Virus record (IMG/VR): IMGVR_UViG_3300030616_000016
Coordinates: 124,001 to 188,000 of that record
Direction: 5' to 3' (one strand)
DNA: 64,000 nt
Shown here piece by piece: positions 5,714 through 17,174 of this stretch. The notes under the pieces are model-generated. The model was not told the origin of the DNA. It searched no databases and saw only the letters and a list, made by a program, of their open reading frames with translations. Positions within the stretch are counted from its first letter, which is position 1. Each line of letters begins with the position of its first letter. Position numbers and translations under genes: made by a program.

Positions 5714-6175
5714 CTATTGCTCTGATCCCACCACCTCAAACCACCGACACCGATATTTATTTCCAGCTTGATGAATTTCAGATAATTTAGTTCGTACTTT
5801 AATAATCTCTACCTTATTGACACTGTATTCTTTCGCATGTCGCAAAGTGGGCCATAAATATAAGCCGGGATGACATTCTGTGGTGCATACTGAGAAAAAA
5901 TCAGCCGAGTAAAACCGACCATCTCTATATTTATCAATATGCCCAGCTTCCCGAGTTCGATAACCAATAGCATAACCTTCGTCAATTTCGGGCCAGTCCG
6001 TTGGCGTGTTTAATGTCGCGTTCGGATCTAAAACGGTGTTCGACAAATTGGCTCCGGACAGATTAGCTCCGGACAGGTTGGCTCTGTACAGATTAGCTCC
6101 GGACAAATAGGCTCCGGACAAAGATGTCCCTTCGATCTCTTTTAACAATATTCCATCTTTATTTTTGATTTTCAT
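5714..6175 (-). CDS. Pentapeptide-repeat protein
   Basis: GTSLS GAYLS GANLY RANLS GANLS GANLS, then a Cys/His domain. Confidence 0.75.
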   Translation of the reverse strand: MKIKNKDGILLKEIEGTSLSGAYLSGANLYRANLSGANLSGANLSNTVLDPNATLNTPTDWPEIDEGYAIGYRTREAGHIDKYRDGRFYSADFFSVCTTECHPGLYLWPTLRHAKEYSVNKVEIIKVRTKLSEIHQAGNKYRCRWFEVVGSEQ

Positions 6176-7579: not shown

Positions 7580-8800
7580 CTATGTCAATTGTTCTGGAAT
7601 AAGCTCGCTTTGATTTCTCCAATTTAGAGCTTGTTCCACTGTTTTGATATTTTGTGGTACGCATTCCATGTGCCATGTACCAATGCTTGGATTTAGCATT
7701 TTAAGATAAGGCCATTTGCCGGTCTCACCCTTCAGATCTACTACAACCAATTCATAATCTCCTTGCGTGTCCAGTGATTCAGCGCCCGTAGATTTGACAA
7801 TTCGTTCTATACCTACCTTTCTTATAAACTCCCTACGGACTTCTGCATTATCAAGTTCTGCGAATTTAGCAGGGTCAATGTCATGCTCATTCGTTTCTGC
7901 TAACCACTGCGGAACTCGTACATTATTCAAATGCCACAGTCCCCAACCGTCCGCAAATTTTACAGACATTCCTCCATCTTTATGCAGATGACTGGCTTTC
8001 CAGTTTATTTCGATTGGATTCCGACTTACAATAGCAACATTTTTATACAGTGCGCTTGAGGATATTTTTCTGTTGTAATTTAGAAATATATCATATTTTT
8101 CTTTCTCATATTTAACGCCTATATATTTCCCAAACTCGTAAACTCCGCACCAATCATTCCACCATATGTTTATATACTGCTCGGTTTTTAATTTGTTGGC
8201 ACTAAGCCTGTCACGAAGGCTGTCACGAAGGCTGTCACGAAGGCTGGCATCAAGACTGTTACGAAGACCGGCACTAAGACTATCATAAAAACTATTATGA
8301 AGACTGTCATAAAGACTGTTACGAATATTGTCATGAAGGCTGTTACGAAGACTTTTATGAAGACTGGCATAAAGACTGTCATAAAGACTGGCATAAAGTT
8401 TGTCATAAAGATTGTCATGGAGACTGTTACGAAGACTTTTACGAAGACTTTTACGAAGACTGGCATCAAGACTGTAATAAAGACTGTCATAAAGACTGGT
8501 ATAAAGTTTGTCATAAAGATTGTCATGGAGACTGTTACGAAGACTTTTATGAAGATTGTCATGAAGATTGTTATGAAGATTGTCACTAAGCAAATGTTCT
8601 GTTAGTGCTGTTGTTAATGGGCTATCACAGATTATAATTTTAATGGCATTATCTGCACCAGTCATTTTTACAATAGGCAATACTGCGTGTTTAATTTCTT
8701 CATCACTGTATTGCGCCGATATGAGGTTTAAACAGCGATTTATATGTCTTGGTATCATTTTTTCTTGTTCTTTTGTTAAACTCATAATTTCCTCTTTCAT
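7580..8800 (-). CDS. DUF6745-like protein with central tetrapeptide (LxxS/N) repeat
   Basis: LHKDGGMSVKFADGWGLWHLNNVRVP, EVRREF, YLKMLNPS, over 30 LxxS-type units. Confidence 0.7.
   Translation of the reverse strand: MKEEIMSLTKEQEKMIPRHINRCLNLISAQYSDEEIKHAVLPIVKMTGADNAIKIIICDSPLTTALTEHLLSDNLHNNLHDNLHKSLRNSLHDNLYDKLYTSLYDSLYYSLDASLRKSLRKSLRNSLHDNLYDKLYASLYDSLYASLHKSLRNSLHDNIRNSLYDSLHNSFYDSLSAGLRNSLDASLRDSLRDSLRDRLSANKLKTEQYINIWWNDWCGVYEFGKYIGVKYEKEKYDIFLNYNRKISSSALYKNVAIVSRNPIEINWKASHLHKDGGMSVKFADGWGLWHLNNVRVPQWLAETNEHDIDPAKFAELDNAEVRREFIRKVGIERIVKSTGAESLDTQGDYELVVVDLKGETGKWPYLKMLNPSIGTWHMECVPQNIKTVEQALNWRNQSELIPEQLT
8200..8590. repeat. Intragenic 12-bp tandem repeat with a higher-order 72-nt block duplicated at period 108
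   Basis: Units such as GAAGACTGTCAT/AAAGACTGTTAC; block at 8371 repeated at 8479. Confidence 0.95.
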
Positions 8801-10482: not shown

Positions 10483-11598
10483 CTATGTCAATTGTTCTGG
10501 AATAAGCTCGCTCCGATTTCTCCAATTTAGAGCTTGCCGCACTGTTTTGATATTTTGTGGCACGCATTCCATGTGCCATGTGCCAATGCTTGGATTTAGC
10601 ATTTTTAGGTACGGCCATTCGCCAGTTGTGCCTTTTAGATCAACAAGAAGTAGCTCATAATCGCCTTGTTTATCTAATGATTTAGCGCCCATAGATTTGA
10701 CAATTCTTTCAATACCTACCTTATAAATAAATTCTCTGCGAATCTCTGCATTCTTAAGCTTACTGAATTTAGCTGGATCAATATCATGTTCATTTTGCTC
10801 TGCTAACCACCGTGGTACATTTACGTTGTTAAGATGCCAAAGCCCCCAGTTATCTGCGAATCTTACGGACATCCCGCCATCTTTATGCAACTTATTGCCC
10901 TTTGAGTTTATTTCAATTGGATTACGACTTACTAATATGGTATCCCCCCATACATTACAAGAAAATATTTTTCTATTGTAATTCACGACTCGATCATATT
11001 CTTTCTGATCGTATTCTAATCCGAGGTGTTTAAATAGCTCATAACATCCAATCCCTTCAATGTTACTATAACTTATAGATGGTATTAGAGGTTCATCGCC
11101 ACGGACAATCTCTTGATAAAGATGAAATAGATCACCAGTAAAACAGGTATCCTCTTCATAATAAAGCTCAGCAAGAATCTGGAATTTGATGTTACTATGA
11201 ATATCTCTGTTAATACCATCGCTAAGTTTTGAAGACAGCATGTATTTAAGTTTGTTCATCAATGGTTCTTTCTCTTCAGCAGCCTTTTGTACTTCATACA
11301 TATTCTCAGTTATATGGCGGTATTTAATAACTAAAGCTTTTTCTCTTGGCAGCTTTGCTTCTTTGTTGCTGTTATTTTGAATATCAGGCATTTTATTCAC
11401 AATCGCCATTGGACTATCACATATAATGAGTTCAACGTCTTCAATGCTCGTATTTATTACTTCAAGCGCAACAGCCACGGCTTGTTTAATTTCATCATCA
11501 GGATATTGTTTCGTGAGCAAGCTTATGGATTTATTTGCCTGTTGTGATGCAAGTTCTAGCATTTGTTCTTCTGTAAGCTCAGACATTGAGAATTTCAT
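10483..11598 (-). CDS. DUF6745-like paralog with non-repetitive centre
   Basis: Shares IICDSP and the whole C-terminal domain with 7580-8800; last ~120 nt nearly identical. Confidence 0.75.
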   Translation of the reverse strand: MKFSMSELTEEQMLELASQQANKSISLLTKQYPDDEIKQAVAVALEVINTSIEDVELIICDSPMAIVNKMPDIQNNSNKEAKLPREKALVIKYRHITENMYEVQKAAEEKEPLMNKLKYMLSSKLSDGINRDIHSNIKFQILAELYYEEDTCFTGDLFHLYQEIVRGDEPLIPSISYSNIEGIGCYELFKHLGLEYDQKEYDRVVNYNRKIFSCNVWGDTILVSRNPIEINSKGNKLHKDGGMSVRFADNWGLWHLNNVNVPRWLAEQNEHDIDPAKFSKLKNAEIRREFIYKVGIERIVKSMGAKSLDKQGDYELLLVDLKGTTGEWPYLKMLNPSIGTWHMECVPQNIKTVRQALNWRNRSELIPEQLT

Positions 11599-14963: not shown

Positions 14964-15165
14964 ATTAATAATGAACGACTAACGGTTATCGGGCGTCATT
15001 TCTTTCTCCTTTCATCAAAGATGTTATTGCTTTCTAAAGTAAAAATCAATCCACAATACCAATATAACTAGACCCTATGATGCCCTCGTATGCTTGCGAG
15101 AAGGGGTCTATTTGGCAAAGTTATTTAAAAAGAGTGTTGGTACAATTTATGACTTATTTTTGTTA

Positions 15166-15194
15166 TTGACAGAAAAGAGGACTAATAGTATAAT
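15166..15194 (+). promoter_or_regulatory. Perfect sigma70/sigmaA promoter
   Basis: TTGACA (15166-15171), N17, TATAAT (15189-15194), upstream of the HNH gene. Confidence 0.9.
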
Positions 15195-15257
15195 ACTATA
15201 TCATAGTTTCACATATGAACTTCATATACTATTAGCCCTTTTTACATAAGGAGTGGT

Positions 15258-15650
15258 ATGATGGCATGGCAATGTACTGTTTATTCGCGTAGGGGCGACG
15301 AGAATCCCTTGCCTGAAAACTGGCATGAAATTAAACTTAATGTTGTTTTCAGAGATAGATTCACTTGTCAAATGTGTGGCAAGAAGTTCAAGTTTGAAGA
15401 ACTTGATGCGCATCATTTGAAACCCCGTTCTGAAGGAGGTACTAATAACATCAAGAATCTAATAACATTGTGTGAAGATTGTCATGATGTTGTTGAGGTC
15501 AATGGAATTCGCTACCGGGATATTATCAGGAATAAGCATAGACTGCAGCGAGACAGGCAAGAAAAACTTTATGAACTTAAGCATGGGAGCAAGAAATGCA
15601 AGAGAATCAAGAAGAAACCAATAGCGAACAAAGAGAACTGGCAGACATAG
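15258..15650 (+). CDS. HNH endonuclease
   Basis: RDRFTCQMCG...AHHLKPRSEGGTNNIKNLITLCEDCH; AAGGAG SD. Confidence 0.9.
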   Translation: MMAWQCTVYSRRGDENPLPENWHEIKLNVVFRDRFTCQMCGKKFKFEELDAHHLKPRSEGGTNNIKNLITLCEDCHDVVEVNGIRYRDIIRNKHRLQRDRQEKLYELKHGSKKCKRIKKKPIANKENWQT

Positions 15651-15853
15651 GTATACGGCGGATACAACCCTCCGTCGTAGAGCCGCTGCATATTTTACTC
15701 AACAAAGGTGTTACTAAATGGGTTATATCCAAGCGCGTTGGTGTTACGTGGCGTACCGTAAGATACTGGGAGCAAGGGTTTTCTGAACCTAAAGAGTTCA
15801 ATATGAAAGCCTTGTGGGATCTTGTAGATGAGGTTAATGAAGCAGGTGGCTGA
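15596..15853 (+). CDS. Small HTH (XRE-like) DNA-binding protein
   Basis: VISKRVGVTWRTVRYWEQGFSEP helix-turn-helix pattern. Confidence 0.65.
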   Translation: MQENQEETNSEQRELADIGIRRIQPSVVEPLHILLNKGVTKWVISKRVGVTWRTVRYWEQGFSEPKEFNMKALWDLVDEVNEAGG

Positions 15854-15911
15854 CACATACCATCCAGCACTCTCAATTATGTCCTTGAGTGTATCAGAGT
15901 CGTAGAATACC

Positions 15912-15968
15912 CTATTTGCGTTTGCTCCGTTTGAAGCGGTTCCTGGTTCTGCTGTGCCTCTTCTTCAT
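15912..15968 (-). CDS. Candidate 18-aa Arg/Lys-rich peptide
   Basis: MKKRHSRTRNRFKRSKRK*; purine-rich GGAAAGG upstream, inside the last helix of the structured array. Confidence 0.3.
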   Translation of the reverse strand: MKKRHSRTRNRFKRSKRK

Positions 15969-16458
15969 ACCCTTTCCACTTGTAAAATGAGAGGGAAGAG
16001 GTTAGCCGCCATCCGCCTCCTACACCAATCCCCTGACATACCCTCTCAAGTTAATAAAGGGGAGAGGGCTTTCTTGCTCCACGTCAGCCTCCAATGTTAG
16101 AGTTGGCCCAGCTGTACGTACCCTCTCTGAGAGCTTGCTACCATATTGGTGACTGTTGTGGTCGTCACCTTACCGCCCCCGATTCTATTACGATCCAACG
16201 CCCAAGGGTAGCAATTGGAAAGGTGAGAGACTTTCTTCCCACCACGCAATTAGCGTATCTCTCTGGGTGTAGTCTCTGATGAGATAAATCTACGACTGTA
16301 GGTGGGGCTAATAGTCCTACCTTGAGACGTTTAACGAATCATTCCAGACGTTGTGAAATTCCCATCAGGTGAGAGGCTTTGTTCGCCACGTACAGCCACC
16401 GGCGTTTATTCCGGATGTACACCTCAGTTAGTACTGAGTACGCTGTCCGTATCCTCTC
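15968..16458. ncRNA. Candidate structured ncRNA made of tandem repeats of a two-helix motif with variable inserts (strand unresolved)
   Basis: Plus-strand junctions AGG(T/G)GAGAGR-CTTT-N5-7-CCACG at 16058, 16221, 16367 and (CG)TA-Y-CYCTC at 16039, 16117, 16254, 16448, with complementary helices around inserts of very different length. Confidence 0.6.
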
Positions 16459-16474
16459 GTAGGCTCTGAGTTAC

Positions 16475-16696
16475 CTACTCAGCCGTTTTCGAATCCAAAT
16501 CGCAAGCAGCGATCTCTTCATCGGGCTGAGTTTCGCTAAGCTGTTTCTTGAGTTCAGCGATGGTTTTGTGGCTGGTGTCCAGATTGCTCTGGAGCTCGGA
16601 GATGGTCTGGTTTCGCTCTGTCAACGCCTTCTCCTGGTCCTTGTTTGTTTTGACCAGACGCTGACACTTCTGATGCAACATTTCACGCTTTGTCAT
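16475..16696 (-). CDS. Small coiled-coil protein
   Basis: Heptad-rich; AGGAG SD. Confidence 0.65.
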   Translation of the reverse strand: MTKREMLHQKCQRLVKTNKDQEKALTERNQTISELQSNLDTSHKTIAELKKQLSETQPDEEIAACDLDSKTAE

Positions 16697-16793
16697 GCTT
16701 GTCTCCTGTTAAAATAAAGTTGGTGTGTGAACCCGTATACGAACGTAAGTACACACGGGAATATTACATATAACCTACTTATTATAAGTAATG

Positions 16794-17174
16794 TCACGAT
16801 ACTGATTCAAGCTTCTTCTGAAGCTCATCAATTGTTGCGTAGATGCCCTTGGCATCATCATCAAAGCGACTCATCAGTCGCCTGAAGATTCTGTAGTTGA
16901 TGTTGAAGTCGTCCTTGAACACCCTCACCATCTTGTTTATTGCGAAACTGAATTGGAGCCGCATTGCCTTGTCACCAGACTTCTCAGCTTCCTCCATGCG
17001 GTTTAGGGCGTTGTCTATCTGACTCATGGCCAGAGCCGCTACTTCCAGGTGGGGTACTATTGACAGACGAGCAGCGGCGTGCTCCTTCTTTCCTTTAGCT
17101 ACATCGAACAGATTCATGTTACTCTCCTTGTCAAATATTGCTGGTGTTCTCTCCAATTCCCGAGGGTATTGCAT
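16794..17174 (-). CDS. Helical hypothetical protein
   Basis: AAGGAG SD before an internal ATG (MNLFD), which may be the true start. Confidence 0.65.
   Translation of the reverse strand: MQYPRELERTPAIFDKESNMNLFDVAKGKKEHAAARLSIVPHLEVAALAMSQIDNALNRMEEAEKSGDKAMRLQFSFAINKMVRVFKDDFNINYRIFRRLMSRFDDDAKGIYATIDELQKKLESVS

What the first reader, a model, noticed from the sequence alone, without database searches (positions are those of the whole stretch)
15968..16458. Tandem array of a two-helix structured motif with fixed junctions and variable inserts
Seen (plus strand): helix A pairs TA-Y-CYCTC (16039, 16117, 16254; degenerate 15968; unpaired half 16448) with AGG(T/G)GAGAGR (16058, 16221, 16367), always followed by CTTT-N5-7-CCACG. 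Helix B then opens at ACG and closes at CGTA (16079-16120, 16242-16257, 16386-16451). Inserts range from ~5 to ~100 nt and themselves fold (TTGCTAC/GTAGCAA, CTGATG/CATCAG, CAGC/GCTG). Conserved unpaired junctions around variable stems are the signature of a functional RNA (or ssDNA) fold, not of a simple repeat. On the minus strand the order GG..AAAG-CC(helix)GG-RUAC loosely recalls the P2 flanks of the c-di-GMP-I/cGAMP (GEMM-I) aptamer, but GGCAAA and the tetraloop/receptor are absent. Speculative roles: multivalent ligand or protein sponge (e.g. against nucleotide-signal immunity), processed guide-like units next to the HNH gene, or a ribozyme array.
Basis: partly seen in the sequence, partly recalled or inferred. 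Interest (0 to 1): 0.85.

Follow-up and report, generated by a model that had tools for sequence, protein, structure and literature searches.

The report
Orphan hairpin-module array in jumbo phage
A 470-base non-coding stretch of an uncultured 231-kb phage carries three to four copies of a hairpin module with a conserved one-sided loop; the repeat is real and matches no known RNA family, but it occurs in one phage lineage only, has no significant covariation, and its function is unknown.

Summary
The repeated motifs are real and far above chance: 8 CTCTC/GAGAG pentamers in 441 nt against 1.4 in shuffles, and a structural descriptor that hits three times in 64 kb, all here. The region is non-coding and matches no Rfam family, so GEMM-I, hammerhead and tRNA readings are out.

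Two related haplotypes, L117 and L067, change the picture.
- They carry the array without the HNH gene. The HNH/HTH cassette (15143-15900) is a later insertion.
- The 'degenerate unit at 15968' is a deletion scar inside a 59-aa minus-strand ORF, not a unit.
- Copy number varies between 2 and 3 modules through recombination between repeats.

The better unit is GAGAGR, then CUUUSUU..CC, then ACG[variable hairpin]CGU, then A, then YCUCUC. The conserved blocks are 65-82% identical between copies, while the two spacers of the window are no more alike than shuffled sequence.

Structural evidence is thin. One covarying pair is not significant, whole-array fold z-scores are -1.2 to -1.7, and the strand is undetermined.

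My best guess (0.38) is a cis-acting RNA in a minus-strand operon of small ORFans, recognised through the conserved loop. Interest is moderate to low.

The parts
15989..16047 (.). M0, a degenerate module: GAGAGGG ... CCCTCTC (7 bp) closing a C-rich 45-nt loop. It lacks the CUUU..CCACG block and the inner hairpin.
   Evidence: Inverted repeat I2. It is the minimum-free-energy fold of 15985-16050, z -2.17. It is present in all three haplotypes.
16062..16127 (.). M1: GAGAGGG / CUUUCUUGCUCC / ACGU-CAGC[hairpin]GCUG-ACGU / A / CCCUCUC
   Evidence: P1 probability is about 0.46 and the inner helix 0.87-0.98. On the minus strand the fold has z -2.47 and 70% of the ensemble.
16128..16224 (.). It has its own hairpin potential (TTGCTACC/GGTAGCAA, GGTGAC/GTCACC) and ends in the conserved AAAGG.
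   Evidence: A diverged copy (75% identical) forms spacer 2 of the L117 allele.
16225..16263 (.). M2, the minimal module (39 nt): GAGAGA / CUUUCUUCCCACC / ACGC-AAUUA-GCGU / A / UCUCUC
   Evidence: Its sixth P1 pair is A-U where M1 and M3 have G-C.
16264..16370 (.). Spacer 2 of the window allele, unrelated to spacer 1 (49% identity, the random level). It contains a chance CUGAUGAG.
   Evidence: It is replaced by a spacer-1-like sequence in L117 and is absent in L067.
16371..16458 (.). M3: GAGAGG / CUUUGUUCGCC / ACG-ACAGC[two hairpins]GCUGU-CGU / AU / CCUCUC
   Evidence: P1 probability is about 0.5.
16462..16490 (+). Hairpin GGCUCUGAGU-UACCU-ACUCAGCC followed by GUUUUCG, terminator-like on the plus strand only. 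Its right half belongs to sequence found only in the HNH+ haplotype.
   Evidence: Fold z -3.01 on plus against -0.63 on minus. Homology with L117 and L067 ends at 16468.
15912..15982 (-). Remnant (last ~23 codons plus stop) of a 59-aa ORF with an Arg/Lys-rich tail. Its ribosome-binding site and N-terminal two thirds are removed by a 123-nt deletion.
   Evidence: The intact ORF is L067:774-953(-) = L117:5001-5180, with AAGGAGA-N6-ATG. The deletion is seen in alignments A2 and A3.
15143..15900 (+). Inserted cassette, not part of the array: consensus sigma-70 promoter 15166-15194, HNH endonuclease ORF 15258-15650, and an overlapping 85-aa Cro/C1-like HTH ORF 15596-15853.
   Evidence: Promoter 12/12. 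HNH at Pfam 1e-14. HTH. The cassette replaces 22 nt of the L117 allele.
16475..16696 (-). 73-aa coiled-coil ORF directly upstream of the array on the minus strand. It is present only in the HNH+ haplotype; L117 has a 56-aa membrane-like ORF there instead.

Best explanation
The array is a lineage-specific set of three paralogous hairpin modules, M1 to M3, plus one degenerate copy, M0.

Module anatomy:
- A 6-7 bp outer helix, GAGAGR/YCUCUC.
- A conserved 11-13 nt loop on one side only: CUUUSUU..CC on the plus strand, GG..AASAAAG on the minus strand.
- An inner helix that always opens ACG/CGU and carries a distal hairpin of free length (7-57 nt).
- Spacers of about 100 nt between modules, which are free to diverge or be swapped.

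Shown:
- The anatomy above.
- The array arose by duplication and still changes copy number by unequal recombination between the repeats.
- It sits in a plastic region of small ORFan genes of a 231-kb myophage. In the allele without the HNH cassette it lies between two minus-strand ORFs, with no terminator called on that strand between them. M0 ends 8 nt before the ribosome-binding site of a 59-aa gene with an Arg/Lys-rich tail.

Inferred:
- It acts as RNA, most probably as part of that minus-strand transcript.
- The juxtaposed conserved loop and helix ends of each module are recognised by a trans factor. That factor could be an RNA-binding protein, possibly the basic 59-aa product, or a processing nuclease.
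- Recognition sets the processing, stability or translation of the flanking small genes.
- Several copies give multivalent binding.
For: - Motif enrichment and clustering are far above chance.
- The conserved blocks are 65-82% identical between paralogs, while the window's spacers 1 and 2 are at the random level. This argues for constraint on the blocks.
- The two blocks are separated by 7, 33 or 57 nt that always form a hairpin, so they meet only in a single-stranded fold.
- Isolated modules fold into outer helix, loop and inner helix as the minimum-free-energy structure on both strands. Minus-strand z-scores are -2.47 for M1 and -2.17 for M3.
- The sixth outer-helix pair is G-C, A-U, G-C in M1, M2, M3.
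- All point differences between the window and L117/L067 inside modules fall in distal loops or bulges, convert U.G to C-G, or touch the terminal outer-helix pair. None falls in the loop block or the ACG/CGU base.
- In the HNH-free alleles all flanking genes are on the minus strand and no terminator was called between them on that strand.
- The array is no more diverged than the coding flanks: about 97-99% identity in aligned module parts against 92-98%.
Against: - Covariation rests on one pair, and 100 of 500 shuffles reach it.
- The whole-array fold is not significantly more stable than shuffles.
- GAGAG can pair three ways: with the upstream CTCTC, with the downstream CTCTC, or with the local pyrimidine tract. 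The structure is therefore not unique.
- The strand is undetermined. Wobble pairs slightly favour plus, module z-scores slightly favour minus.
- In the window haplotype the 59-aa gene is destroyed yet the array is intact, so it cannot depend on that protein there.
- There is no expression data.
- No homolog exists outside one phage population, so the conservation is shallow.
Confidence: 0.38

Rival explanations
1. A plus-strand non-coding RNA. It would be made from its own promoter, or in the window haplotype as the 3' part of the HNH/HTH transcript, and would act in trans as a multivalent decoy or sponge for a host or phage RNA-binding factor.
For: - A perfect sigma-70 promoter at 15166-15194 reads into the array.
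- A hairpin plus U-tract, specific to the plus strand, lies right after it (z -3.0 on plus, -0.6 on minus).
- Several wobble pairs exist only on the plus strand: U16095.G16102, the outward extensions of the outer helix, and a 10-bp hairpin with two G.U in spacer 2.
Against: - The promoter and half of the terminator-like hairpin belong to sequence absent from the HNH-free alleles, which still carry the array.
- No plus-strand promoter was detected upstream of the array in L117.
- Plus-strand module z-scores are only about -1.
Confidence: 0.2
2. A DNA-level element. The repeats would be protein-binding or recombination sequences of a plastic genome region, like PeSL motifs of T4-type phages, that promote cassette exchange. 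Any hairpin potential would be incidental or act as cruciform or single-stranded DNA.
For: - Gene content differs on both sides of the conserved array: 73-aa against 56-aa ORF, HNH cassette and deletion against an intact 59-aa ORF.
- Homology breaks 10 nt after M3.
- Copy number and spacer identity change by recombination between the repeats.
- PeSLs are described as small composite motifs that mediate indels in hyperplastic regions (PMC4122927, PMC2839356).
Against: - No promoter hexamers or U-tract terminators lie inside the modules.
- The motif occurs nowhere else in 64 kb, nor, as an exact pattern, elsewhere in the 231-kb contig, whereas PeSLs are dispersed and flank ORFs.
- The spacing between the two conserved blocks (7 to 57 bp) fits a duplex binding site poorly.
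Confidence: 0.14
3. Neutral debris of recent tandem duplications, with no function. The shared blocks are simply what has not yet diverged, or are homogenised by gene conversion.
For: - The element is confined to one phage population.
- Covariation and fold z-scores are both non-significant.
- One allele has lost a module without obvious consequence (L067).
- The closing stem of spacer 1 is not kept in its L117 paralog.
Against: - Divergence is strongly uneven. Blocks are 65-82% identical, while the window's spacers 1 and 2 and the distal hairpins are at random level.
- The block pairs always flank a hairpin.
- Differences between alleles spare the blocks.
Confidence: 0.13
4. A member of a known ligand-sensing or self-cleaving RNA class: GEMM-I or cGAMP riboswitch, hammerhead or another small ribozyme, or a type III antitoxin-like array.
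For: Only loose resemblances: tandem structured units, a CUGAUGAG in spacer 2, and a phage context.
Against: - No Rfam family reaches E<=10 over 15700-16800 on either strand except a chance preQ1-II hit outside the array.
- CUGAUGAG is not conserved in L117.
- There are no exact short tandem repeats.
- No ToxN/AbiQ-like or other defence protein lies nearby.
Confidence: 0.03

Closest known systems
PeSL (promoter-early stem-loop) composite motifs of T4-type phages (PMC2839356, PMC4122927)
   Same: Short repeated hairpin-containing motifs in a plastic region full of small ORFans. Recombination between copies creates indels and cassette swaps. Both features are seen here.
   Different: PeSLs are a promoter plus a terminator, and they are dispersed, each flanking an ORF. 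Here there are no promoter or terminator signals in the modules, all copies sit in one ORF-free intergenic stretch, and there is none elsewhere.
Type III antitoxin RNA arrays (ToxI, CptI) and phage pseudo-ToxI mimics (PMC5086642, PMC3475682)
   Same: A tandem array of small structured RNA units carried by a phage, with a copy number that changes by recombination. The idea of one unit per protein ligand is also shared.
   Different: ToxI-type units are exact head-to-tail repeats of 34-36 nt without spacers, form H-type pseudoknots, and sit next to an endoribonuclease gene. Here the modules are 39-88 nt with free distal hairpins and ~100-nt spacers, TRF finds no tandem repeat, the pseudoknot I proposed is not supported, and there is no ToxN-like gene.
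Arg-rich peptide / hairpin systems (lambda N-nut in the leader of the N gene; HIV Rev-RRE). From my own knowledge, not tested.
   Same: Repeated hairpins with a one-sided, purine-rich (minus-strand) internal loop lie immediately upstream of a small gene whose product has an Arg/Lys-rich tail.
   Different: There is no boxA, no boxB-type pentaloop and no sequence similarity. The 59-aa protein has no homolog at all, and it is deleted in the window haplotype.
   Same: Several similar helix-junction-helix modules in a row, with conserved unpaired nucleotides.
   Different: No covariance-model match to any riboswitch, and no metabolic or signalling gene downstream.
REP/BIME-type repeated extragenic palindromes. 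From my own knowledge.
   Same: Clustered imperfect palindromes with a conserved head motif in an intergenic region.
   Different: REPs occur in tens to hundreds of copies across a genome. This motif is confined to a single locus.

Membership tests
c-di-GMP-I / GEMM-I riboswitch (RF01051) | Match to the family covariance model (P1-P2 aptamer with GNRA tetraloop and receptor) | tested here: not met
   No hit at gathering score in 64 kb. No hit at E<=10 in 15700-16800 on either strand.
Hammerhead and other small self-cleaving ribozymes in Rfam | Conserved catalytic core in the right helical frame (covariance-model match) that is conserved among alleles | tested here: not met
   No Rfam hit. The CUGAUGAG at 16277 lies in spacer 2 and is absent from L117 and L067.
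Type III toxin-antitoxin antitoxin array (ToxI-like) | Exact head-to-tail repeats of about 34-45 nt without spacers | tested here: not met
   TRF finds no tandem repeat in 15860-16480. The modules are 39, 66 and 88 nt, separated by 97 and 107 nt.
Type III toxin-antitoxin antitoxin array (ToxI-like) | Adjacent ToxN/AbiQ/CptN-type endoribonuclease gene | tested here: not met
   No Pfam, PHROG or PADLOC match of that kind in any flanking ORF of either haplotype.
PeSL composite promoter-terminator motif | Sigma-70-type early promoter plus terminator stem-loop within each repeat | tested here: not met
   No promoter-like or terminator-like site is called inside 15990-16460.
PeSL composite promoter-terminator motif | Many dispersed copies flanking ORFs of the plastic region | tested here: not met
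   The motif is found only in the array. The whole 231-kb contig has only these three exact matches.
PeSL composite promoter-terminator motif | Repeats act as points of recombination that create indels between close relatives | tested here: met
   L067 lacks M2 and spacer 2 through a junction inside the repeated ..GGAAAGG block. L117 carries a spacer-1-like spacer 2.
CRISPR array / solitary-repeat RNA anti-CRISPR | Repeats of fixed length (about 28-37 nt) with near-identical sequence, and regular spacers if it is an array | tested here: not met
   Module length varies from 39 to 88 nt, and only 12-20-nt blocks are shared. No host repeat is available to compare.
tRNA / tmRNA | Cloverleaf, or tRNA-like domain plus tag, detected by ARAGORN | tested here: not met
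   0 genes in 64 kb.
H-type pseudoknot unit (my own hypothesis: GGNG 5' of GAGAG pairing with CNCC before ACG) | Second stem kept in all copies and alleles | tested here: not met
   The window copies give G.U, U-A and U.G at the variable pair. L117 M2 has G.A and L117/L067 M3 has U.C, and there is no compensating change.
Structured RNA in general (covariation criterion) | Statistically supported compensatory changes in the proposed helices | tested here: inconclusive
   One G-C/A-U exchange in the outer helix, reached by 100 of 500 shuffles. Two compensatory pairs in a spacer hairpin between paralogs. There are too few independent sequences.

The most novel reading that the evidence does not exclude
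The modules are a new class of phage RNA: a multivalent platform whose 39-nt minimal unit (6-bp helix, conserved 13-nt one-sided loop, ACG/CGU-based hairpin) binds a protein. That protein would be either the phage's own Arg-rich 59-aa product, in a Rev/RRE-like or N/nut-like circuit, or a host RNA-binding defence or regulatory factor that the array titrates. Copy number would be tuned by unequal recombination.
Probability: 0.15. Interest if true: 0.7.

Novelty: new variant of a known kind. Interest (0 to 1): 0.36.

Why it matters
If the modules are functional RNA, they would be a compact (39-nt), easily testable new protein- or nuclease-recognition motif from the 'dark matter' of a jumbo phage. 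They would also show a regulatory RNA whose valency is tuned by recombination. If they are only recombination-prone repeats, they still show how an ORFan region of a jumbo phage is reshuffled, through HNH cassette gain, gene loss and module loss, around a fixed non-coding anchor. At present the element is confined to one uncultured phage population, so its general importance is limited.

Tried and rejected
1. Coding region or pseudogene. All six frames are closed. The conserved nucleotides are read in different frames in different modules, by my reading and L067 ORF 1031-1312. The 93-aa ORF across the L067 array is most likely a by-product of the deletion.
2. Known RNA families. Rfam at gathering score and at E<=10 gave nothing. 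ARAGORN found nothing.
3. H-type pseudoknot (GGNG/CNCC). It looked attractive in the window but is broken without compensation in L117 and L067.
4. It is possible but never better than the downstream pairing, and it has no support in the ensemble.
5. Functional link to the HNH gene. The cassette is an insertion that is absent from the alleles that keep the array. There is no extended similarity between cassette and array.
6. Loop blocks as antisense seeds. The M1 loop is complementary to the ribosome-binding site of the 85-aa ORF over 11 nt and ranks first among plus-strand targets. But it ranks first by only 0.9 kcal/mol, the M3 loop has better targets elsewhere, and the target region is a low-complexity purine repeat. 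I treat it as chance.
7. Homologs by synteny.
   - The 85-aa, 763-aa, 197-aa and 59-aa neighbours have no relatives beyond this population.
   - GenBank phages give no DNA hit.
   - Exact-pattern scans of IMG/VR, JGI metagenomes and GTDB genomes give only this phage. The other 102 single hits lack the closing element.
8. A covariance model was not built.
9. Type III TA or other defence context. No relevant protein was found.

Full report
**Setting.** The window is part of IMGVR_UViG_3300030616_000016, a 231,647-bp uncultured phage contig. It encodes a tail sheath, and its major head protein is 31% identical to that of Bacillus jumbo phage 0305phi8-36. Genes at 1-24 kb lie mostly on the minus strand. 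Almost none of them has a Pfam or PHROG match. The interval 15854-16474 has no open frame on either strand and a GC content of about 0.5, against about 0.40 for the window.
- To its left is a plus-strand island: a 12/12 sigma-70 promoter (15166-15194), an HNH endonuclease ORF (15258-15650, Pfam 1e-14) and an overlapping 85-aa Cro/C1-like HTH ORF (15596-15853).
- To its right is a minus-strand 73-aa coiled-coil ORF (16475-16696).

**The observation.**
- CTCTC/GAGAG occurs 8 times in 441 nt, against 1.4 +/- 1.2 in 500 dinucleotide shuffles. None of the shuffles reaches 8.
- The block AAAGGNGAGAGRCTTTSTTC with up to three mismatches is found only here in 64 kb.
- A purely structural descriptor finds exactly three places in both strands of the window, all inside the array. 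The descriptor is any 6-bp helix, then CTTT..ACG, then 5-69 nt, then CGT, then the helix partner. Shuffled windows give about one hit.

So the repeat is real. It matches no Rfam family at gathering score. At E<=10 the only hit is a chance preQ1-II match outside the array. There is no tRNA or tmRNA, and TRF finds no head-to-tail repeat in the array.

**Relatives.**
- GenBank phages have no DNA match.
- Exact-pattern scans of IMG/VR, JGI metagenomes and one genome per GTDB species return three-fold matches only from this phage. The 102 other single matches lack the closing element and look like chance.
- The flanking proteins have no homologs outside this population, even in an all-against-library HMMER search.
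- Six other assemblies carry a 100% identical array.

One single hit, L067 (Ga0272441_10262333), turned out to be a variant allele. Its 59-aa ORF led to a longer contig, L117 (ENA ERZ27252253). These two alleles are the only comparative data, and they are informative.

**What the alleles show** (alignments A2 and A3; blastn).
1. Both lack the HNH/HTH cassette. Window 15143-15900 replaces 22 nt of L117, so the cassette is a later insertion and the array is not an appendage of the HNH gene.
2. Both have an intact 59-aa minus-strand ORF with an AAGGAGA ribosome-binding site and an Arg/Lys-rich C-terminal tail. It lies directly downstream of the array in the minus sense. The window has a 123-nt deletion that leaves only the last ~23 codons (15912-15982).
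3. The 73-aa ORF is specific to the HNH+ haplotype, and L117 has a 56-aa membrane-like ORF in its place. Homology ends 10 nt after the last module.
4. L067 has two junction modules. The break lies in the repeated ..TTGGAAAGG.. block, which removes M2 and spacer 2.
5. L117 has three modules, but its second spacer is a 75%-identical copy of spacer 1 and not the window's spacer 2.
6. Point differences inside modules are few. They lie in distal loops or bulges, turn U.G into C-G, or touch the terminal pair of the outer helix.

**Redefining the unit.**
- The downstream partner is as good or better in every case: 8 vs 7, 6 vs 5 and 8 vs 6 bp in the window.
- It uses up every element. Four GAGAG (15989, 16062, 16225, 16371) pair with four CTCTC (16043, 16123, 16259, 16454).
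- It is the pairing seen in the thermodynamic ensemble: about 0.5 for M1 and M3, against <=0.01 for helix A.
- Its sixth pair is G-C, A-U, G-C in M1, M2, M3, whereas helix A would give a C.A mismatch and a G.U there.

The module is therefore GAGAGR, then CUUUSUU..CC, then ACG[variable hairpin]CGU, then A, then YCUCUC. The copies are M1 16062-16127, M2 16225-16263 (the minimal form, 39 nt), M3 16371-16458, and a degenerate M0 at 15989-16047.

Isolated modules fold this way on both strands. The conserved blocks are 65-82% identical between paralogs (null 44 +/- 7% for the 28-nt block), whereas spacers 1 and 2 of the window are 49% identical, exactly the null. Two conserved blocks are held at variable distance by a hairpin. 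That is the main argument for a single-stranded fold.

**Limits of the structural evidence.**
- The one covarying pair is reached by 100 of 500 column shuffles.
- The whole array folds with z = -1.7 on plus and -1.2 on minus. Pieces range from about -0.6 to -3 on plus and from +1.6 to -2.5 on minus.
- A local hairpin or pseudoknot stem (GGNG/CNCC) looked promising in the window but is broken without compensation in L117 and L067.
- The closing stem of spacer 1 is not kept in its L117 paralog, although an inner hairpin shows two compensatory pairs: GGUGAC/GUCACC against UGUGAG/CUCACA.
- The strand cannot be decided. A few wobble pairs exist only on plus. Module stability and gene context favour minus.

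**Most likely mechanism.** In the HNH-free alleles the array lies between two minus-strand ORFs. No terminator is called on that strand, and only a weak 9/12 promoter-like match points away from the array on the other strand. The array must therefore be part of that transcript, and M0 ends 8 nt before the ribosome-binding site of the 59-aa gene.

I therefore favour a cis-acting RNA (confidence 0.38). Its repeated modules would present a conserved one-sided loop next to two helix ends for recognition by a protein or a processing nuclease, and so affect the stability or translation of the neighbouring small genes. The steps 'is RNA', 'minus strand' and 'is bound' are inference.

The rivals are:
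- a plus-strand trans-acting RNA, which the window haplotype would express from the cassette promoter and end at the plus-specific hairpin plus U-tract at 16462-16490 (0.2);
- a DNA-level recombination or binding element of PeSL type (0.14);
- neutral duplication debris (0.13);
- a known riboswitch or ribozyme class (0.03).

**Comparison with known systems.**
- PeSL motifs share the genomic behaviour, meaning repeats at indel junctions in an ORFan region (PMC4122927). They do not share the anatomy or distribution.
- ToxI-type antitoxin arrays share the idea of tandem RNA units in phage biology (PMC5086642, PMC3475682). The repeat geometry, the pseudoknot and the partner nuclease all fail here.
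- GEMM-I, hammerhead, CRISPR-like repeats and tRNA are excluded as far as these tools reach.

**Verdict.** This is a real, lineage-restricted array of hairpin modules that matches no described family. It is independent of the neighbouring HNH gene, has recombination-driven copy-number variation and has no assignable function. It is a reasonable candidate for a small new RNA motif, but the evidence for structure is suggestive only.

Noticed in passing
window 15143-15900: A free-standing HNH cassette with its own perfect TTGACA-17-TATAAT promoter is inserted antisense into a minus-strand gene block. The HNH ORF and the 85-aa HTH ORF overlap by 55 nt in different frames, so this may be a split or frameshifted two-domain homing endonuclease. 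The overlap contains a 9-nt purine repeat (GCAAGAAAT x2.8).
   Followed up: partly
window 15912-15982 (-); L067:774-953 (-); L117:5001-5180 (+): A 59-aa ORF with an Arg/Lys-rich tail (..GKGMKKGRGRTRNRFKRSKRK) is intact in HNH-free alleles and truncated by a 123-nt deletion in the HNH+ haplotype. It has no homolog in 1.84 billion representative proteins.
   Followed up: yes
window 16704-16771 vs L117:4406-4473: An 87%-identical 68-nt segment with strong hairpin potential (GUGUGUGAACCCGUAUACG..) is 5'-untranslated leader of the 73-aa ORF in the window, but is the C-terminal coding part of a 56-aa ORF in L117. A weak chance preQ1-II Rfam hit (E 5.5) overlaps it.
   Followed up: no
L067:1031-1312 (-): In the two-module allele a 93-codon open frame (TTG start, no ribosome-binding site) runs across the whole array on the minus strand. 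Two of the allele's substitutions remove a stop codon. It is probably accidental, because L117 and the window are closed in that frame.
   Followed up: partly
window 15586-15597 and 15623-15633 (+): The loop blocks of M1 and M3 are complementary over 11 and 10 contiguous bases to the ribosome-binding site and early codons of the 85-aa ORF. Duplex energies are not exceptional against the rest of the window, and the target is low-complexity.
   Followed up: yes
window 7580-8800 and 10483-11598 (-); 5714-6175 (-): There are two paralogous DUF6745 proteins and a pentapeptide-repeat protein in the same minus-strand block. Otherwise the block is nearly all ORFans, including a 763-aa protein with no detectable homolog.
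   Followed up: no
window 16005-16047 (+): The loop of M0 is strongly C-rich and G-poor on the plus strand, and correspondingly G-tract-rich on the minus strand. This composition is typical of Rho-loading sites on plus, or of G2-quadruplex potential on minus.
   Followed up: no
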